Of a stretch of 64,000 nt of DNA, positions 18,881 to 27,439 are shown one piece after another. The notes beneath the pieces are model-generated. The model was not told where the DNA came from. It did no database searches and saw only the letters and a list, made by a program, of their open reading frames with translations. The translations under genes and the position numbers were made by a program. Numbering within the stretch: the stretch's first letter is position 1; every line of letters starts with the position of its first letter. The stretch covers positions 230,942-294,941 of the forward strand of contig NW_005434598.1 in assembly GCF_000315625.1 (NCBI RefSeq), given 5' to 3'. This DNA is from Guillardia theta CCMP2712. Taxonomy: Eukaryota; Protista; Cryptophyta.

Positions 18881-20129
18881 ATTTTCTCTTGCCTTGGTAT
18901 GAACACTGTTGAAGAGAAAATGATCAAAGTTTTCTAACTGTGATTCCGTTCAAACGGTTTCAAGCTGAGCTGCTCAGCGGCGGTCCACTGTAACTGAAAG
19001 TTCCTAAGACTACTGCTCAGTTGGTCTCCTTCATCACTTAGTACTCGCCCCGCGGTAGTGTCCTAGCCTAGTAGTCTCTTTCCTAGAGAGAGGTATCCGA
19101 CTGTTCCTCAGCCTCCTTCCTCGTTGTTCTCACCGCGAACCCTCAGCAGTCACTCACTCAGTCAGTAGTAGAGCAGAGCAGTGGGTCATGTCAAACTTGT
19201 CAATTCAATGATTAGCCGCTCAACTGAAAGCACGCCCCCCCCCTCCGTTCGCCGGGCCCGATTCATCTGTGCGGCTGACTGAGTGCCGCGTGCCGCTGAG
19301 TCACGGGCCAGGATCAGTCACTGCCTCCGGCATCTCACGACTCAGAGTCCCTCCGGGCCCCCGGTGGCGGCCCAGTCACTCGGATCTGCTCCGTCGCCGG
19401 ATCCGATCGGATCGCCCGGCCCGGCCCGTCATGGTCACCACTAGTACGCCGGCAGCACTGACAGTCACTGAGTCACCCGTACGCCTCCTTCTCATCGCCC
19501 TCATATCCATCAGGTTATCCACCCTACCTTGCAGGTTCGTACCCCTAGGGAGACAAATTGCTAGAATAAATCAAATATTGTTCAAAAATGTAAGTGTAAT
19601 ATTGAAAATTAAATAGTATTTTCTGAGTATTAATTTATTTTTATGACCCCTGCCCTGAGAAAGGTTGAGCACCGCCTTGTTAGTACCCCACCCCCCTTCC
19701 CTTCCTGTACCCCTACCCCCTTTCCAAACAGTCACTACCACCGGGTTTGTGGGGGTACCTTGCTAGGCTCTTTCCTCGGGCATGGCCTAAAGGCGCTTCG
19801 AGGAGAGGAGAGGAAGAGGAGGAGAGAGGAGGAGGAGGAGGAGGAGGAGACCAAGAGGCGAGAGGAAAGAGATAGGGAAGAGGAGGAGGAGCAGATTGAG
19901 GAGAACACACGGGAGAATCCGAATCCGACGTACAAGGGACCTACGAGATCGTTTCTAGCAGCCTTTCCAATGCAATGACAGAATTTCTCTCCGATTGATC
20001 AGAAGGCAGTTGCGATTCTTTAGACTCAAGAACCCTTTCGCAAAGAACTTACTGGGCAAGTGGTCAACGGTGCTGATGTTGTGACATATGGCCGGACAAG
20101 ATTTGTTGCGTTTCTCTACAGCAAACATC

Positions 20130-22302
20130 ATGAATGAACTTTTTCTCCTTCTGCAAGTTTTGTTACTCATTGGAACTCAACTGGCAACGGTGGAGAGTTT
20201 TCTCACTGCAGCTCCTTCTCTCCACCCAGTTGCTCAACACTTCTTTCCTGCAGCGAAAGGACCATCCTCCGCTCACATGGTGTGTCGTGCGAACGTCGGG
20301 ACTCAGTTGGGCAACGGACAGTATGCTCGGGCTTTCCTTGCCTTCAAGTCTCATCGGAGTGCGATGGGACGATGGAGAATGGATGTATCGAAGTTGAAAC
20401 TGTCTGAAGGAGGAGGAGGAGGAGAGGAGGAAGACACTGACATCGACATGGAGGTCAAGATCTACACAGCGATCAGTAAGATCGATCGTTTAGAGTGGAA
20501 CAAGTGCTGCGAGGAGGCTGCAGGGAAGGGCAAGGAGAATCCCTTCCTCGCGTGGGAGTTTCTGAACGCCCTCGAGGAATCTGGATCGGCTTCAGGGGCT
20601 TCGGGCTGGGCCCCCCACCACCTTGTTGTGCATGACAAGCACAGCAGTCGCATCCTTGCTTGCGCTCCTGTGTACCTCAAGGGCCACAGCTATGGGGAGT
20701 ATGTGTTCGACCATTCCTGGGCTAGAGCATACAGGACGTTCTCCAGCGACAACTACTACCCGAAGCTGCAGTGCTGCGTGCCTTTCACTCCTGTGATGGG
20801 GCCGAGGCTGATGGCGAGGGGCGAGACGGAGGAGGAGGCAAGGAGAGCGAGGAGGGCGCTGGCTCGGGGGATGGTGGAACTGTGTAGTAAGTACGGGCTG
20901 AGCAGTGCGCATGTGACATTTCCCACCAAGGAAGACTGGGAGCTGATGGGCAGGCAAGGGTTCCTGCTGCGGACGGGGATACAGTACCACTGGAGGAACG
21001 AAGGGTACCAGAGTTTCGACGAGTTCCTGATGCGGCTGAAGCAGTCGAGGAGAAAGAGCATCAGGCAGGAGAGGAACAAGGTGGCGAAGGCGGGGGTGAG
21101 GGTGAAGGCTCTGACGGGAGAAGAGATTGAGGAGAGGCATTGGGATGCGTTCTATCAGTTCTACCTCAATACGGTAGATGAGAAATGGGGGCAGGCTTAC
21201 CTGAACCGAAAGTTCTTCACCCTGTTGGGAAGGGAAATGGCAAACAAGGTCTTGCTCGTGGTGGCGGAGGAGGAGGAGACTGGAGAGCTGGTGGCGGGAG
21301 CGCTGAACCTCATTGGAGGAGACTGCCTGTATGGCAGGAACTGGGGATGTAGCAAGAAGTACGACTCTTTGCACTTTGAGCTTTGCTACTACCAGGTTCT
21401 TCTCCTCTCCTCCTCTCCTCCTCCCCTCCTCCCCTCCTTTCCTCCTCCCCTCCTTTCCTCCTCCCCTCCTCTCCTCCTCTCCTCCTCTCCTTTGTTTCGA
21501 TTCGTCCTCAAGTTTTCTTTCCTTCCCTGCATTTCCCTTTTTCCTCTCCCCCCTTCCCCTCCCCTTCCGCCTCTCTTTCCACTCTGATCGCTACTCGTCG
21601 CCTCCTCCAGGCCATCGATGCCGCCATCCGCATGGGGCTTCAACGGGTGGAGGCAGGAGCGCAGGGGGAGCACAAGATTTCCCGCGGTTACCTCCCGACC
21701 TTCACTTACAGCGCTCACTTCATACGCGTTCCCAACTTTCGCAATGCTGTGAACCAAGCGCTGGTTCAGGTTCCTCCCTCTCCTCTCAACCCCTTCCCTC
21801 CTTCGAATCTTCCCTTCCCTTGCTCCATCTCTCCCCCCTTTTCTCAGTTGCTCCCTCCCTCCTCTCCCTCCCTCCCTTCTCCCTCCGTCCCCTCCCTCCT
21901 TCCCCTCCCCCCCTCCCTGCCTCCCTGCCTCCCTCCTTCCCATCCCTCCCTCCCTCCCTCCTTTCCGTCCTAGGACCTTATATGATCGTTTGCGGCAGGA
22001 AAGGGATCAGATCATTTATGCGTCTGCCATGCTCACACTGCAAGAGTCGCCATACAAGGTGAACCAACACCGCAGCTCATCCTCACCGTGCTGACTCTCC
22101 TTTCTCCCCTTCCTATCATCTTCTGCTGTTACTCCACCTCCACCTCCACCTCCATCCTCTGATTCTGTCCTCCTCACGCCTTGTCCTCCCCCCCTCCCTC
22201 TCACCCTTAGTTGTACTTCTACTTATCTGCTCCCTCGGATTTCAGGAAGGAGCCGAGCAGCATCTGGAGTCTCAAGGCATTCGCATTCAGAAATCTCAAT
22301 GA
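20130..22302 (+). CDS. FemAB-like / DUF482 GNAT-family protein with bipartite plastid-targeting leader (4 exons)
   Basis: NPFLAWEFLNALEESGS, YLKGHSYGEYVFDHSWA, YYPKLQCCVPFTPVMGPR, SSAHVTF, GIQYHWRN, LYGRNWG, LHFELCYYQ|AIDAAI..VEAGAQGEHKISRGYLP. Further exons at ~22001-22058 and 22246-22302. Leader MNELFLLLQVLLLIGTQLATVES-FL. Confidence 0.92.
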
Positions 22303-22477
22303 TCTTTTCATGTCGTCGTTGTATTTAAACAGCACAAAGAAATAAAGCAAATAAACAAATTACAATACATCCCCAGCAATCCTGTGTCTGCACTCCCTAC
22401 CCTTCCACCTTCTGTTTTTTCTTGTTGTCTATCGCACGCATGTCAGTCTTTCCAACCTTTCTCTCTCTTCAACTTAC

Positions 22478-25400
22478 TCATTCAACCCAGAAGGTTTCCA
22501 TGTCTCCCTTGCCTTTGATCTGCCGCACGCCTCGGCTGGTGATGCGAAACTCGCTCTCCCCTCCTTGACTCTTGAGGAGATCAGCAGAAAACTTGGAGCA
22601 GTGGATGCGGCCAGCCTATTAAAATCATCACGATCTACAGAATTGAGAGGCAACCAACACGGCAAGAAGGAGAAGGAACATACAAAGCAGGACAACGGGG
22701 ATCTTTTTGCCTACCTCGGAGTTTGACTCCATCCTAGAAGCTGTGTTCACTGTGTCTCCGAACAAGCAGTAGCGCAAGTTTCTGCTGCCTACCACGTTGG
22801 CCACGACAGGACCGGAGTGGAACCCGACACGGATCTGCACGTAGCCCTTGGAAGGATCGTCGCGGTCGATGAGGGTCTCGGACGCACACTGAACTGCGAG
22901 CTTTGCGAACTGAGCGATGCGGAGGGCGTGATCTTCCTTCTGATCCTCGACGAGGTTGGTCACTGCCATGTAGGCGTCGCCGATGGTCTCAACTTTGAAG
23001 ATCGCGTGGTCGTGTGTGATGTTATCGAATCGGGAGTAGAGACGGTCTAGCATGTCCGAGATCTTCTCAGGAGGGAGAGTCGAGCTGATGTCCGTGAAGC
23101 TGACGATGTCGGAGAAGAAGATGGTGACGCAGTCTCGGTGCTCGGGATACACCTTCTTGCCCGCCATGAGAGTGTCTGCAATGTGCTTTGGGAACACGTC
23201 GTAGAGCATCGAAGTCACTCCGTTGTTGCTGCCAAACTCAAACTTGCGGACGATCTCACAGACCTGAGCATGTTGAACCATCTCAGAAGCGTAGGGGAAG
23301 AACGGCTGCGCGCTCGCTGAGAACATGCTGCGAAGAGCCTTGCAGATCTCTTTGAACTGGATCTTCTCGTTACGGAACAAGGCACGCGAGGCTTCGTTGA
23401 AGTTGTCGGAGAGTCCGAAGTAGAAATCATCATTCAAGTACTCGGCAAAATCAAAGTCCTTCTCGATGGGAACTGGGATCACAGGCTTGCGTGTGCGGTA
23501 CGCGTGCACAATGTGCATGATGACCTGGGGGTTTGTGAGCGTGTTGTCTGTCAACAGTACAACAAAGTTCTGAGCATTCTCCATGTGGCGCAGGAGGGAA
23601 GACATCTGAGCTTCTTCCTCTTCAAAGTAGGTGAATCCACGAGCAAAAGGGATGATCTCGTCAAAGAGCAGCTTCAAGATCCTTGCTGTGGCCCTGCCGT
23701 CTCCCTGGTCGAAGACGAGGTAGTTGGAGTAGAGCGATGGAGTATCGGAGGAAGGCATGAAAGTCCTCACTGCATCAGGTGTTGAAAGCCTCAGCTTGTA
23801 CTCATTGGAGAAATCTCCGCAAGACAGCACGACATTCTTAGCCACGGCCTGCAGCTGAGACCACTGAGAAGCCTGTCGGGCGGACGGGTTGTAAACCATC
23901 CTTGGAAGCTCGAGGATCCACCTGATGACTGTCTCCACATCCTCAAAGGTCTTGTTCTGCTTGCAAGCTTGAGACACGTACACGAGTGTGTTCTCGTCGA
24001 CGTGAAGATCCAGGTACTCCCTGAGGTTCTCGTTGCTGACGTTGAAACCAGCCCCTTCAATCTCAACACTCAGAATCGGGATGTTCTTATCAATCGCTGT
24101 GAACAGCTCACACAGGATGCCAGCACGAAACAGCACAGACTCGCTGAGAAGCACAAGGACACTTTTGGACTTGGAGACGCGATCGAGAAGGCTAGACTGG
24201 CTCTCAGAGTTGTCACTCTCGAGGAAGACCCGTGGGTTGTAGAGCTTGCCCTTGTTGTCTGATTCATTCGAGACATCCTCCACTTGGACAAGTTTGTTCA
24301 GCATCAGCTTGATCAGACGAGCTGCCAGCCCAGACTCGTCCGTCCCGTGGCAAAGGAATGTCACATAAGGACAATTCGCGATCTCCTCTTGGAATTCGTT
24401 GAACAGAATACCATTGCCGGCGGATTTTACCGATTTTTCCAGAGCTAGATTCCTCTCGGCAAGCTCAGCAGCGTGGTCCATCAATCTGTTCTGAATCTGC
24501 ACGTGGATCTCATCTTGATACAGCTTGAGCTCCGTTGCAGTCTCAGGATGCAACGTCATCCACTTCCAGATCCTCTTGACTGTGCAAAGCTCGAGAAACT
24601 TTGAAGTCTTCGCTTCGTCTTCTTCTTCGCTCTCAACTTCTCGATGCGTCTTGAAACTGAGAGTAGCAACAAGATTCCTCAAGTCTGTCCACCTTCGCCA
24701 CGCGTTGTCTTCGTACTTCCTGTCTTTCTCCAAACTTGAGATCTGATCAATGACATCATCTGTTTTAGTGACTGACGCATATAGCGGAAAGATCTCTTGA
24801 CAATACTGATCTTGCTCAGCCTGCGTCCTCCCGCACGTGCAGTCCTCAAGCTGATGCACGCGGAAACCAAGCTCATGTGCAGCGCGTCCCGTGGAATCTA
24901 TGCAAACGCTCGTGACGGCTCCACAAAGAACAACATCCGTCACTCGCTCTCGCTTGAGAAGCTCCTCTAGACAAGTTCCTGCAAACGCGTTCAGCCCTCG
25001 CTTCCCCGGGATCTGGATGATTCTGTCGCCGAACTGCGTGATCTCTGGGATGGTCTCGCTGCCTTTGTCTCCCATCTTGAAGGCCTGCACGTCCTTGATG
25101 ACCTTGAGGATCCCGCTCGGCTCAAGGAGCTCGCTGTAGTCCTTGGTGAAGATGATCGGAGTCTCGATGAAGAGCACGCTTGTGTCCTTGAGGCTGTTGA
25201 TGATCTTGAGGGTGTTCCTTAGCACAGAGTCCGAGGATGCTTGGATGACCCCATGCAGCTTGCCATCCCTTCCGAAGTAATCTTTCTGGTATCCTATCAG
25301 CACAACGGCTGTGCGTGAAAACAGCGGCTGAGAACCAACCATGCTGTACGCTTTCTGCAAAAGAAGATCAGAACAAGGAATGGGGGAACATACACCCTCC

Positions 25401-26208
25401 CAGCTTCAGCCTGCAAGATTTTGGACACAATGTCATCAGTCTTAGTGACTGACGCATATAGCGGAAAGATCTCATTGCAGTAGCATTCTTGCTCAGCCTG
25501 CGTCCTCCCGCACGTGCAGTCCTCAAGCTGATGCACGCGGAAACCAAGCCCATGTGCAGCGCGTCCCGTGGAATCTATGCAAACGCTCGTGACGGCTCCA
25601 CAAAGAACAACATCCGTCACTCGCTCTCGCTTGAGAAGCTCCTCTAGACAAGTTCCTGCAAACGCGTTCAGCCCTCGCTTCCCCGGGATCTGGATGATTC
25701 TGTCGCCGAACTGCGTGATCTCTGGGATGGTCTCGCTGCCTTTGTCTCCCATCTTGAAGGCCTGCACGTCCTTGATGACCTTGAGGATCCCGCTCGGCTC
25801 AAGGAGCTCGCTGTAGTCCTTGGTGAAGATGATCGGAGTCTCGATGAAGAGCACGCTTGTGTCCTTGAGGCTGTTGATGATCTTGAGGGTGTTCCTTAGC
25901 ACAGAGTCCGAGGATGCTTGGATGACCCCATGCAGCTTGCCATCCCTTCCGAAGTAATCTTTCTGGTATCCTATCAGCACAACGGCTGTGCGTGAAAACA
26001 GCGGCTGAGAACCAACCATGCTGTACGCTTTCTGCAAAAGAAGATCAGAACAAGGAAAACTAAAGCAACCTAACACACAACTGCAGACAACAATGACTGC
26101 AACTAGTTTCACTGCATCCAAACAAATTGTTCTGCGATGGATTATTGTATCACAATGAAAAAGAAGAGTCAGACCATTGCTCTCTAAATCTGTTTTATAC
26201 TTTGCCAT
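22478..26208 (-). CDS. Fusion protein: 2x isochorismatase-like cysteine hydrolase + coiled coil + 2x TIR (TIR_2-like) + class III guanylate cyclase; start uncertain
   Basis: Hydrolase motifs TAVVLIGYQKDY, PGKRGLNAFAGT, LCGAVTSVCIDSTGRAA occur twice, joined in frame by a 41-nt GT-AG intron (25355-25395). TIR1: TFLCH..VFLESD..VLVLLSESVLFRAGILCEL..IPILSV. TIR2: FVVLLTDNTLTNPQ..KPVIPV. Cyclase: TIFFSDIVSFT, KVETIGDAYM, IRVGFHSG, RYCLFGDTVNTASRMES, last exon AGRIHCS..IKGKGDMETFWVE*. Confidence 0.88.
24755..26057. repeat. Direct tandem duplication, 677-bp period (isochorismatase exon plus its 3' splice site)
   Basis: ~24810-25380 matches ~25487-26057 with one mismatch seen. The ORF track shows identical shadow ORFs at 24891 and 25568. 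Confidence 0.95.
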
Positions 26209-27439
26209 TCATTTCTCTTCCTTGTCTATCTGTTCACCCCTCAAACCCTCTTCGACCATTCGCCTTTGCACTTCGTATGCCTTCTACTGTCTTCACTTCG
26301 TTTCCTCTCCTCTCTCCCTCTCATCTGCTATCGCTCGTCCTTTCCTTCTCTTGCTCATTAAACTCTCCTCGCTTCCTCCCTCCTCTCGATCCCCATCCCT
26401 GCTCTCCCTCCTCCTCACGGCCTACAGCAACATGGCGAGCGCCGTGAGGTTGGACTGTTTCGAAGGTTTTCACGGAAAGGTGGTACTATCCACTGGTCTT
26501 AGCTGAAACCAAAGAGTAAAATACTACAGATTTACTCTTATTGAGTAAACTTTAGTATTATATATTTTAGGTACTTGTGGATACTTTGTGGGTGTTTTCA
26601 AAACTTTTATCCCTAAATGTATATGCCCCCATGACCTGAACCTCACGCAGACGTCATTCTTTGTAGATGGCTACCAAAATCTATGCTAATTTCGGGATAC
26701 ATATCGAAATAAGTGCAATTGATTCGAAATTTCCTTTGTAAGTGGTAGTAAAATAGTTCATATTTTCAAGTTTAAGGGTCAGATCACCTGAAAAGGAAGG
26801 GGTTAATCGACAAGACTCGCCAACTTGCGTTGGAAAGCACGGGGCAGCGGAGATTCTATCTGAAAAAAAGGGATGAGGGAAAATGTGGTCTTTTCGTTTT
26901 AGGCTTGACCTTCTTGCAGACCGGGTTCCGACCCTTTCCACTACCCCTGCCAAATCATGAACCCATCAAGCATGCCCAGATGATACCCCCCCAATAGACT
27001 AATAAATCACCGGTATATCCTACACCCCACCCCAGGATGAGGAAACTTACTATACACCACCCAGCCTGTATCAGGCTTTACCTTGTAACTATGTCCCTGT
27101 AACCCTACCCCCTTTGTACCCAGACACAATGACCCTACCAACTCTTTTTGAGATGATGGTGACATACCCCCCCTTGTCCTCTTCAAAATCAGGTCGATAC
27201 AACAGGTTCACAGCACAACATCTGCACCCCCACCCCCCCTTGTTGTACAACCACCCTACTGGAAGATTACCTGTAACATGTGAGTGAAGCAGATGACGGT
27301 ACATTGTAGCATAATGTGTGCTGGGATGGTACCTTTGACAGTACTGTGATTTTAGTCATATATCTTATAATCTTATATAACGCTCTCACGGCACACCCTT
27401 TGAGTCACCACAGGAACTTGCTTGACGGTTAGACGGTTA

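What the first reader, a model, noticed from the sequence alone, without database searches (positions are those of the whole stretch)
22478..26208. Unusual signalling fusion: tandem cysteine-hydrolase folds + tandem TIR domains + guanylate cyclase
Seen: one spliced minus-strand gene with two isochorismatase-like domains, a short coiled coil (IHVQIQNRLMDHAAELAERNLALEK), TIR1 (~24370-24045), TIR2 (~23730-23450) and a class III cyclase (~23130-22478). No signal peptide or TM helix is evident in the main exons. Established: Glu in VETIGD and Cys in RYCLFGD are the guanine-specificity residues; many TIRs are oligomerisation-dependent NADases releasing nicotinamide; nicotinamidase PncA belongs to the isochorismatase superfamily. 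Inference: a soluble sensor-cyclase in which hydrolase-fold ligand binding and/or TIR assembly controls cGMP output, possibly linking NAD+/nicotinamide or immune-like signalling to cGMP. I do not know this architecture from any characterised protein.
Basis: partly seen in the sequence, partly recalled or inferred. Interest (0 to 1): 0.9.

Follow-up and report, generated by a model that had tools for sequence, protein, structure and literature searches.

The report
Hydrolase-like sensor, tandem TIR, guanylate cyclase fusion
A transcribed gene of a diatom-like alga joins a bacterial-type, probably non-catalytic isochorismatase-like sensor domain (present twice in the DNA), two TIR domains and a complete guanylate cyclase, a combination found in no other protein searched, which suggests a new way of switching on cGMP signalling.

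Summary
One uninterrupted 910-codon frame (25360-22628, minus strand) carries an isochorismatase-like domain, a long helix, two TIR folds and a class III cyclase. The cyclase has every guanylate cyclase catalytic residue. Spliced RNA contigs and raw RNA reads confirm the 99-nt intron, the last exon and the stop.

Three corrections:
- The two isochorismatase copies are a 570-nt near-identical tract (one mismatch), present at double DNA depth. In this assembly they are out of frame by one base at a C5 run (25385-25381). It is unresolved whether both lie in one protein.
- These domains carry Gly at the catalytic acid position. The same holds in all relatives, including N-terminal domains of bacterial hybrid histidine kinases and a GGDEF-EAL protein. 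They look like sensor domains, not nicotinamidases.
- TIR1 keeps the SARM1-type Glu, but TIR2 has His there, and this protein is the most diverged member of its family.

Environmental relatives carry 2x Iso plus 2x TIR and end without a cyclase. No protein combining the three domain types was found among 5.8 billion.

Verdict: a real, expressed and so far unique architecture. The mechanism is inferred. The scan's other notes cover this same stretch only.

The parts
26057..26208 (-). Upstream in-frame leader of ORF1. It starts at ATG 26208 and includes a hydrophobic stretch. It is probably not part of the abundant mRNA.
   Evidence: RNA contigs here have depth 3-4, against 232-610 in the gene body. 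Hydropathy maximum 2.55.
25487..26056 (-). Identity tract, copy 1. It covers a leader/linker-like segment, a possible start ATG at 26019-26017, and the body of isochorismatase-like domain 1 (Pfam domain about 25989-25432).
   Evidence: One mismatch in 570 nt against 25379-24810. Pfam Isochorismatase E 5.9e-30.
25380..25486 (-). Diverged tail of copy 1, ending in AEAGRVYVPP. Relatives have GKTYSPP, GRSYTPP or GKFYSPV at the end of their first domain.
25381..25385 (-). C5 homopolymer where the reading frames of copy 1 and copy 2 part by one base.
   Evidence: In the copy 1 frame VYVPP is followed by a stop 27 codons later (stop at 25299-25297). One base further on, the frame reads IPCSDLLLQKAYSMVGSQPLF, which aligns with the inter-domain linker of the relatives.
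25355..25395 (-). Candidate 41-nt intron (GTGTAT...TTTTGCAG) that would restore the frame. Unverified.
   Evidence: One search gives an open 1133-codon CDS if it is removed. Word shares of RNA runs are compatible with this but not decisive.
24810..25379 (-). Identity tract, copy 2. It covers the linker, a second in-frame ATG at 25342-25340, and the body of isochorismatase-like domain 2 (Pfam domain 25312-24755).
   Evidence: The DNA contig of run X2 over 24765-25312 has depth 128, against 63-68 in the flanks.
24401..24754 (-). Family-specific helical inter-domain region with a long helix (ORF2 residues about 272-316, containing IHVQIQNRLMDHAAELAERNLALEK).
   Evidence: AlphaFold2 pLDDT 84-95 over this helix. 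W63, E80, Q84, I85, L89, D91, A93 and A94 are invariant in 8 relatives.
23810..24376 (-). TIR domain 1. It keeps the SARM1-type catalytic Glu (E418 of ORF2, in LCEL). The family motif RPW is RAG here.
   Evidence: VIA Z 13.6 to the RPS4 TIR over 159 residues. The family profile matches C. elegans TIR-1/SARM1 at E 2.8e-5, with Glu aligned to Glu. Alignment.
23222..23740 (-). TIR domain 2. The Glu position is His (H616, in VIMHIV).
   Evidence: VIA Z 15.8 to the RUN1 TIR and 15.7 to the SARM1 TIR (rmsd 2.1 A over 127 residues). Pfam TIR_2 24.9 bits, below the cut-off of 28. Alignment.
22715..23152 (-). Class III cyclase catalytic domain, first part. It lies in the same exon as the TIR domains.
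   Evidence: Pfam Guanylate_cyc E 2.6e-43. Best solved relative is the GC-A/NPR1 catalytic domain, E 4e-37, with FSDIV, VETIGDAYM and RYCLFGDTVNTASRMES aligned.
22616..22714 (-). 99-nt GT..AG intron inside the cyclase domain.
   Evidence: Joint seen in RNA contigs of runs X4 and X6 and in 14 raw reads of X24.
22478..22615 (-). Last coding exon: the end of the cyclase domain (AGRIHCS...KGKGDMETFWVE) and the TGA stop at 22480-22478.
22429..22477 (-). 49-nt intron in the 3' UTR, starting directly after the stop codon.
   Evidence: Joint seen in RNA contigs of X4 and X6 and in 73 raw reads of X24.

Best explanation
This is a real, strongly transcribed nuclear gene of a diatom-like alga. It encodes a soluble multidomain guanylate cyclase.

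Shown:
- One continuous exon encodes an isochorismatase-like domain, a long helix, two TIR folds and a class III cyclase.
- The cyclase carries all residues of a homodimeric guanylate cyclase.
- A second, nearly identical isochorismatase-like domain lies directly upstream.

Inferred:
- The isochorismatase-like domain is not a hydrolase but a small-molecule sensor. It has Gly at the catalytic acid position, and the same subfamily forms the N-terminal input domain of bacterial histidine kinases and of a c-di-GMP enzyme.
- Ligand binding is passed through the helix and the tandem TIR module, which acts mainly as an assembly or transducer unit. This sets whether two cyclase domains pair into the active dimer, so that cGMP reports the ligand.
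- The core cassette (two sensor domains, helix, two TIR domains) is older and occurs without a cyclase in other eukaryotic plankton. The cyclase is a lineage-specific addition, after which the TIR motifs of this protein diverged.
- The two sensor domains were homogenised by recent gene conversion.
For: - Architecture in a single open frame.
- Splicing and expression: spliced RNA contigs at depth 232 and 610, plus 73 and 14 junction reads.
- Cyclase residues D751, E791, D795, R863, C865, N872 and R876 align with GC-A.
- TIR folds at Z 13.6-15.8 with pTM 0.84 for the pair, and a profile match to TIR-1/SARM1.
- Gly23 is invariant in 11 sequences, among them 8 bacterial signalling proteins at 39-54% identity. 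Their architecture is Iso, PAS, HisKA, HATPase_c, REC, or Iso, GGDEF, EAL, REC.
- In two of these the Lys is lost, and in one the Cys is lost.
- Relatives P0001 and P0002 are complete ORFs with 2x Iso and 2x TIR and no cyclase.
- No protein with all three domain types ranked above single-module hits.
- This protein deviates at 16 of 68 conserved columns of the TIR module, the most of 11 members.
- The identity tract has 1 mismatch in 570 nt, while the tails keep first-domain and second-domain character.
- DNA depth is doubled over the repeat.
Against: - No ligand, activity or oligomeric state was measured.
- The sensor reading rests on the residue pattern and on domain context in bacteria, not on experiment. 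Cys153 and Lys120 are retained, so a modified catalysis is possible.
- TIR1 keeps the catalytic Glu, so an enzymatic role for TIR is not excluded.
- The assembly puts the two sensor domains out of frame.
- RNA runs hold only 4-6 of 13 sampled words around the junction, so the abundant protein may contain only one sensor domain.
- A homodimer prediction of the helix gave no answer.
Confidence: 0.5

Rival explanations
1. NAD-linked enzyme cascade. TIR1 cleaves NAD+ when the protein assembles. The isochorismatase-like domains bind or deamidate the released nicotinamide, which relieves product inhibition. The cyclase is switched on by the same assembly, coupling NAD+ breakdown to cGMP.
For: - The TIR1 Glu aligns with the catalytic Glu of TIR-1/SARM1 and is invariant in the family.
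- Nicotinamide is used as an inhibitor of TIR enzymatic activity (PMC10242710, abstract).
- Nicotinamidases belong to the isochorismatase superfamily (established knowledge).
- A source names the relatives 'nicotinamidase-related amidase'. This is a generic label.
Against: - The catalytic acid of the hydrolase fold is Gly in every member.
- The nearest solved relatives are 3kl2 and amidases of the biuret hydrolase type, not PncA.
- The same subfamily serves as an input domain on bacterial kinases that have no TIR.
- In this protein TIR2 has His for Glu, and TIR1 has lost Pro-Trp beside the Glu.
Confidence: 0.2
2. The first isochorismatase copy is not part of the working protein. A real one-base frameshift cut it off, and the abundant mRNA starts within the second copy of the leader. 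The product is a 921-residue protein with one sensor domain, TIR, TIR and cyclase. Copy 1 is a short separate product or a decaying remnant.
For: - The frames differ by one base in the assembly.
- An in-frame ATG at 25342 gives an open 921-codon CDS.
- RNA depth upstream of copy 1 is only 3-4.
- RNA runs hold 0.31-0.46 of the words of 25300-25450, while the 2011 runs of unrecorded kind (taken here as DNA) hold 0.69.
- Overall RNA word shares of 0.79-0.85 fit this slightly better than a full unspliced transcript (own arithmetic).
Against: - All full-length relatives have two domains in one frame.
- The tail of copy 1 still reads as conserved coding sequence.
- The break sits in a C5 homopolymer, a classic place for an assembly error.
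- A 41-nt GT..AG intron would also fit the RNA word shares, and a 49-nt intron is proven in this gene.
Confidence: 0.4
3. The tandem repeat is an assembly artefact, and the true gene has a single isochorismatase-like domain.
For: - 99.8% identity over 570 nt is unusual for old domain duplicates.
- Contig ends of DNA run X2 (25312 and 25960) do not match the repeat boundary of the window (26056/25379).
Against: - The repeat body has twice the word depth of both flanks in run X2 (128 against 63-68).
- The two copies have different tails that match the first-domain and second-domain tails of relatives.
- Relatives have two domains.
- RNA contig X4 ends at 26027, as expected for a branch at 26056.
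Confidence: 0.05

Closest known systems
Homodimeric receptor-type guanylate cyclases (GC-A/NPR1; diatom kinase-homology guanylate cyclases such as P0006-P0008)
   Same: The catalytic domain is 46-77% identical to eukaryotic cyclases and best matches solved GC-A (E 4e-37). All metal, specificity (Glu, Cys) and transition-state residues are present in one chain, as a homodimer needs.
   Different: There is no ligand-binding ectodomain, no membrane span and no kinase-homology domain. The cyclase follows directly on the last helix of a TIR domain. The nearest paralogues in its own genome are only 64-68% identical.
Uncharacterised environmental eukaryotic proteins with 2x isochorismatase-like and 2x TIR domains (P0001, P0002, P0004, P0005; partial P0003)
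   Same: 40-45% identity (P0001, P0002, P0004, P0005), covering 71-77% of the query, with the same domain order, helix and motifs. P0003, a 503-residue partial with two Iso domains only, is 67% identical over 29% of the query.
   Different: They end about 30-50 residues after TIR2 with a stop and no cyclase. They start with an MG..C motif. Their two isochorismatase-like domains are 77-80% identical to each other, against 96% here.
SARM1 / C. elegans TIR-1 and plant TIR NADases (RUN1, RPS4, L6)
   Same: TIR fold at Z 13.6-15.8. The family motif W..CE aligns with WVHKE of TIR-1, which includes the catalytic Glu.
   Different: The arrangement is a tandem TIR pair in one chain. In this protein TIR2 lacks the Glu and TIR1 lacks the Trp. 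There are no ARM, SAM or NB-ARC domains. Pfam TIR_2 scores below its cut-off.
Bacterial hybrid histidine kinases and a GGDEF-EAL protein with an N-terminal isochorismatase-like domain (P0270-P0279, e.g. Desulfogranum mediterraneum)
   Same: The isochorismatase-like domain is 39-54% identical. It has the same Gly at the catalytic acid position and the same place at the N-terminus of a signalling enzyme.
   Different: The output is a kinase or a c-di-GMP enzyme reached through PAS domains. There is a single copy of the domain and no TIR. These proteins are bacterial.
Pycsar anti-phage systems (cyclase plus a cyclic-nucleotide-activated TIR effector; PMC11224242)
   Same: A class III-type cyclase and a TIR domain work in one pathway. 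The cyclase hits PADLOC PycC at E 8e-14 through general fold homology.
   Different: Pycsar has two separate proteins. Its cyclase makes cCMP or cUMP, and its TIR lies downstream of the nucleotide. Here the two are fused, the TIR is N-terminal to the cyclase, and the specificity residues are those for GTP.
3kl2, putative isochorismatase of Streptomyces (solved structure, function unknown)
   Same: It is the best solved relative of the hydrolase-like domain (E 6e-32 over 191 residues).
   Different: 3kl2 has Glu where this family has Gly. It is a stand-alone protein.

Membership tests
Class III nucleotidyl cyclase, guanylate cyclase type | Match to the catalytic domain model above the curated threshold | tested here: met
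   PF00211 scores 148.2 bits against a cut-off of 21.9.
Class III nucleotidyl cyclase, guanylate cyclase type | Two metal-binding Asp, plus the transition-state Asn and Arg, in the same chain (needed for a homodimer) | tested here: met
   D751 (FSDIV), D795 (IGDAY), and N872 and R876 (VNTASRMES) align with GC-A.
Class III nucleotidyl cyclase, guanylate cyclase type | Glu and Cys at the base-specifying positions (Lys and Asp in adenylate cyclases) | tested here: met
   E791 in VETIGD and C865 in RYCLFGD.
Class III nucleotidyl cyclase, guanylate cyclase type | Dimerisation and conversion of GTP to cGMP | not testable with these tools
   Needs a recombinant enzyme assay.
TIR domain (NADase type, SARM1-like) | TIR fold | tested here: met
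   Both domains match. TIR1 scores Z 13.6 over 159 aligned residues. TIR2 scores Z 15.8 over 159 aligned residues, and has rmsd 2.1 A over 127 residues to SARM1.
TIR domain (NADase type, SARM1-like) | Pfam TIR model above the gathering score | tested here: not met
   TIR_2 scores 24.9 bits against a cut-off of 28. ThsB_TIR scores 23.8 against 21.2, but no single stretch passes. Relatives P0002 and P0004 do pass.
TIR domain (NADase type, SARM1-like) | Catalytic Glu on the alpha-C helix | tested here: inconclusive
   TIR1 has Glu (E418), aligned with the Glu of TIR-1/SARM1. TIR2 has His (H616). The neighbouring Trp is lost in both.
TIR domain (NADase type, SARM1-like) | NAD+ cleavage | not testable with these tools
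   Needs an assay.
Isochorismatase-like cysteine hydrolases | Match to the domain model above threshold | tested here: met
   PF00857 scores 106 and 105 bits against a cut-off of 27.
Isochorismatase-like cysteine hydrolases | Catalytic triad Asp(/Glu)-Lys-Cys | tested here: not met
   The acid position is Gly23 in both copies and in all 10 aligned relatives. It aligns with Asp of 6azs and with Glu of 3kl2. Lys120 and Cys153 are present.
Nicotinamidase (PncA) | Closest similarity to PncA-type enzymes over the whole domain | tested here: not met
   Nicotinamidase structures match only residues 117-189, at E 2.6e-7 to 1e-4. 3kl2 matches the whole domain at 6e-32. NCBIfam gives only sub-threshold biuret hydrolase, RutB and PRK11440 hits.
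2x Iso - helix - 2x TIR family of planktonic eukaryotes (unnamed) | Same domain order with collinear similarity over Iso, helix and both TIR domains | tested here: met
   40-45% identity over 71-77% of the query to P0001, P0002, P0004 and P0005.
2x Iso - helix - 2x TIR family of planktonic eukaryotes (unnamed) | Both Iso domains in one reading frame | tested here: inconclusive
   They are out of frame by one base in the assembly. Reads over the junction could not be obtained.

The most novel reading that the evidence does not exclude
The Gly-type isochorismatase-like fold is a previously unrecognised class of small-molecule receptor domain shared by bacterial two-component and c-di-GMP proteins and by eukaryotic plankton. 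In this alga it drives a guanylate cyclase through a tandem TIR pair. That would be the first direct wiring of a TIR assembly (or TIR NAD+ chemistry) to cGMP synthesis in one polypeptide.
Probability: 0.25. Interest if true: 0.8.

Novelty: new variant of a known kind. Interest (0 to 1): 0.62.

Why it matters
Diatoms have very many guanylate cyclases, about 70 cyclase-domain matches in this genome alone, and almost none has a known input signal. This gene offers a soluble cyclase with a defined, separable candidate sensor, so it is a tractable case for finding a ligand.

It also ties together three observations that may be of wider use:
- A subfamily of isochorismatase-like domains has lost the catalytic acid and sits at the input end of bacterial kinases and c-di-GMP enzymes.
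- A tandem TIR cassette moves between different proteins in protists: this family, a receptor-like Atlas cluster, cyclic-nucleotide-gated channels and an ammonium transporter.
- A lineage-specific fusion puts that cassette in front of a cGMP-producing enzyme.

If the TIR pair works as an assembly switch for a cyclase, that would be a new output for TIR signalling outside immunity.

Tried and rejected
- Homologue search restricted to residues 225-735 returned nothing, although P0001 and P0002 match that region. I take this as a word-sampling failure, not as evidence.
- An exact-pattern scan of metagenome contigs for the junction, allowing 4-7 C, gave no match.
- The search for related loci on metagenome contigs gave only 3 loci and none with a cyclase. 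One is an ammonium transporter with a C-terminal TIR-like domain.
No contig of any run was laid on 25313-25959, so the base count of the C run and the 41-nt intron could not be read. The raw RNA run is 3'-biased and does not reach the 5' part of the gene.
- The second run search on 25300-25450 gave word shares of 0.31-0.46 for RNA runs and 0.69 for the 2011 runs of unrecorded kind. These exclude an unspliced, identical transcript across the junction, but cannot separate 'intron spliced' from 'transcript starts at copy 2'.
- Own-genome searches for a second copy, an allele, or channel-type TIR relatives found only this locus.
- Homodimer prediction of the helix (ORF2 residues 254-320, two copies) returned 'no answer' (score 0.01). 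This is not evidence either way.
- The contig of P0125, which looks closer to this protein in the helix region, is only 1657 nt long and says nothing about its C-terminus.
- Literature searches for this architecture found nothing describing it.
- I considered and rejected a separate cyclase gene, because the frame is single and the RNA contigs are continuous. I also rejected contamination or a bacterial origin of the locus, because of the GT..AG introns and the expression in several RNA studies of the same organism labels.
Full report
**Anatomy**

On the minus strand there are two long frames.
- ORF2 (25360-22628, 910 codons) contains, by Pfam:
  - Isochorismatase, residues 17-202, E 3e-30.
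  - A sub-threshold TIR_2 match, residues 587-655, 24.9 bits against a cut-off of 28.
  - Guanylate_cyc, residues 737-885, E 2.6e-43.
- ORF1 (26208-25297, 303 codons) contains a second Isochorismatase domain (E 5.9e-30).
- Everything from the second isochorismatase-like domain to most of the cyclase lies in one exon, so this part of the fusion does not depend on a gene model.
- The organism is a eukaryote with short GT..AG introns. The best named cyclase hits are diatoms such as Corethron, Chaetoceros, Thalassiosira, Seminavis and Nitzschia.
- The assembly has 87 Mb in 669 contigs.

**Transcription and splicing**

- Contigs of two runs, X4 and X6, cover 22300-24794 continuously. They come from different studies and have depths of 232 and 610.
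- Two segments are removed in these contigs:
  - 22714-22616 (99 nt, GT..AG). This joins ...MESNSE to AGRIHCS...KGKGDMETFWVE and completes the cyclase domain.
  - 22477-22429 (49 nt). This begins directly after the TGA at 22480-22478 and is therefore a 3' UTR intron.
- Raw RNA reads of a third study (X24) show the same joints, with 14 and 73 reads.
- Because these contigs are spliced, they are RNA, whatever the run records say.
- The RNA contigs stop at 24794, where the repeat begins.
- Upstream of copy 1 (26027-26363) only contigs of depth 3-4 were found. The ATG at 26208 and the hydrophobic leader behind it are therefore probably not part of the abundant mRNA.

**The two isochorismatase-like copies**

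- The copies are identical from 26056 to 25487 and from 25379 to 24810, apart from one mismatch in 570 nt. After that they diverge and then become unrelated.
- The diverged tails are informative.
  - Copy 1 ends in AEAGRVYVPP, like the first domain of the relatives (GKTYSPP, GRSYTPP, GKFYSPV).
  - Copy 2 continues into the family's helical region, like their second domain.
- In relatives the two domains are 77-80% identical to each other.
- I therefore read the tract as recent gene conversion between two old domains, not as a new duplication.
- In DNA run X2 the repeat body has word depth 128, against 63-68 in both flanks. This argues against an assembly artefact.
- The start-to-start period is 677 nt, which is not a multiple of three.
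  - After VYVPP the copy 1 frame runs into a stop at 25299-25297.
  - One base further on, the frame reads IPCSDLLLQKAYSMVGSQPLF. This matches the relatives' inter-domain linker in length and pattern (P0003: SLDDLHIRKSITSVDVSGKGEFF).
  - The switch point is a C5 run at 25385-25381.
- Three readings remain:
  - A homopolymer error in the assembly.
  - A real frameshift.
  - Rescue by a 41-nt GT..AG intron at 25395-25355, which gives an open 1133-codon CDS from ATG 26019. This intron would remove the conserved VYVPP.
- I could not read the junction. No contig of any run was laid there.
- The word shares are 0.31-0.46 for RNA runs and 0.69 for the 2011 runs of unrecorded kind, which I take to be DNA. 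These only exclude an unspliced transcript identical to the assembly.
- My odds are about 55:45 that both domains are in one protein. The alternative is a 921-residue product starting at ATG 25342.

**Nature of the isochorismatase-like domain**

- The best solved relative is 3kl2 (E 6e-32). PncA-type nicotinamidases match only part of the domain, and weakly.
- NCBIfam gives only sub-threshold hits to hydrolases of the biuret hydrolase, RutB and PRK11440 types.
- The catalytic acid of the family is Gly here, in the motif LIGYQKDYF. It aligns with Asp in 6azs and with Glu in 3kl2.
- The Gly is present in both copies and in every relative.
- A search restricted to this domain found its nearest kin outside the eukaryotic family, at 44-56% identity.
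  - They are the N-terminal domains of bacterial hybrid histidine kinases (Iso, PAS, HisKA, HATPase_c, REC). Examples come from Desulfogranum mediterraneum and from Cellvibrionaceae genomes.
  - One further protein has the architecture Iso, GGDEF, EAL, REC.
- All of these share the Gly. Two have lost the Lys and one has lost the Cys.
- A hydrolase fold without its acid, sitting at the input end of signalling enzymes in two domains of life, is best read as a ligand-binding sensor. That step is inference.

**TIR domains**

- A profile of 11 family members matches the TIR domain of C. elegans TIR-1/SARM1 (E 2.8e-5). Both halves match, and the family motif W..CE aligns with WVHKE.
- AlphaFold2 on ORF2 residues 320-735 gave mean pLDDT 83.5 and pTM 0.84.
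- Foldseek and VIA-align place both halves in the TIR fold:
  - TIR2: Z 15.8 to RUN1 and 15.7 to SARM1 (rmsd 2.1 A over 127 residues).
  - TIR1: Z 13.6 to RPS4.
- The TIR1 Glu is invariant in the family and is present here (E418).
- The TIR2 Glu is present in 6 of 11 members and is His here.
- This protein deviates at 16 of 68 highly conserved columns of the module, the most of all members. The deviations include Pro-Trp to Ala-Gly next to the TIR1 Glu.
- This suggests changed constraint after the cyclase was added. The sample is small.

**Helical inter-domain region**

- The region between the sensor and TIR1 is helical.
- Pairing of that helix was not shown (one search gave no answer).

**Cyclase**

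- The best solved match is the GC-A/NPR1 catalytic domain (E 4e-37).
- The aligned residues are the two metal Asp, the Glu and Cys that specify guanine, and the Asn and Arg of the transition state.
- This is the residue set of a cyclase that works as a homodimer. That rule is established knowledge for class III cyclases.
- The genome has about 70 cyclase-domain matches. The nearest are 64-68% identical, so the fusion is not a very recent copy of a paralogue.

**Distribution**

- The closest proteins among 5.8 billion are P0001 and P0002 (984 and 999 residues, 44-45% identity), P0004 and P0005 (41% each), and the partial P0003 (67% over 29% of the query), all from environmental assemblies.
- P0001 and P0002 are complete frames with untranslated flanks. 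They start with an MG..C motif, carry two isochorismatase-like and two TIR domains, and stop 30-50 residues after TIR2 without a cyclase.
- No hit combined PF00857 or a TIR family with PF00211. Such a protein would have outscored the pure cyclases.
- A full scan of 1.84 billion cluster representatives with the TIR region found 310 relatives, 8 of them with both TIR domains.
- Single TIR-like domains of this family sit at the C-terminus of channels with Ion_trans and/or cNMP_binding domains, in 13 of 13 tested. One sits on an ammonium transporter.
- The whole tandem pair recurs on a 927-residue receptor-like Atlas cluster (TM 0.69 over 342 residues).
- This genome has only the one locus.
- By sequence features, the nearest Atlas cluster is a bacterial group carrying Guanylate_cyc, of which 29% also carry DUF4062 (score 0.78, a lead only).
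- DUF4062 has recently been described as a TIR-like NADase (preprint 10.64898/2026.05.01.722283). A TIR-like domain next to a cyclase may therefore not be unique in the widest sense.

**Mechanism**

- Shown: the domains, their order, the catalytic residue patterns, expression and splicing.
- Inferred: the sensor domains bind a small molecule. The helix and the tandem TIR pair transmit or convert this into a change of assembly. That change sets the pairing of two cyclase domains and hence cGMP output.
It is weakened by the missing acid in the hydrolase fold, by the lack of specific similarity to PncA, and by the drift of the TIR motifs in this very protein.

**Novelty**

- All four domain families are known.
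- The eukaryotic 2x Iso plus 2x TIR family is uncharacterised, and the addition of a guanylate cyclase to it was found nowhere else.
- I rate it a new variant of a known kind: a class III guanylate cyclase with an unprecedented regulatory module.
- There are two side leads: the Gly-type isochorismatase-like sensor domain, and the mobile tandem TIR cassette.

Noticed in passing
P0270-P0279 (bacterial proteins): A subfamily of isochorismatase-like domains with Gly at the catalytic acid position forms the N-terminal domain of bacterial hybrid histidine kinases (with PAS, HisKA, HATPase_c and REC) and of one GGDEF-EAL-REC protein. The Lys or Cys is also lost in some. It looks like an undescribed sensor domain class. 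No paper on it was found.
   Followed up: partly
P0132, P0136, P0137, P0139, P0151-P0153, P0159, P0161-P0163, P0181, P0192; L019:22-2505: TIR-like domains related to TIR2 of this gene sit at the C-terminus of channels of the cyclic-nucleotide-gated type (Ion_trans and/or cNMP_binding) and of an ammonium transporter, in unnamed environmental eukaryote sequences. None occurs in this genome.
   Followed up: partly
window 25312 / 25960 against 26056 / 25379: Contigs of DNA run X2 end as if the two copies stop being identical upstream of 25989/25312. The assembly has them identical up to 26056/25379, and an RNA contig end at 26027 fits the assembly. This may be a strain difference, heterozygosity, or a local assembly problem in 25313-25379.
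   Followed up: no
window 22429-22477: A 49-nt intron starts at the base right after the stop codon TGA. It is confirmed by 73 raw reads and two RNA contigs.
   Followed up: yes
window 20088-22300: The RNA contigs that carry this gene run on for 1.5-1.8 kb below 22300, towards the convergent plus-strand gene at 20088-21587. That gene is followed by a low-complexity Ser/Pro/Leu-rich stretch at about 21400-22000. The 3' ends of the two genes may overlap.
   Followed up: no
G000:C76:200865-201359: One of the three closest paralogous cyclase domains (64% identity) lies on the same contig, about 52 kb from this gene and outside the window.
   Followed up: no
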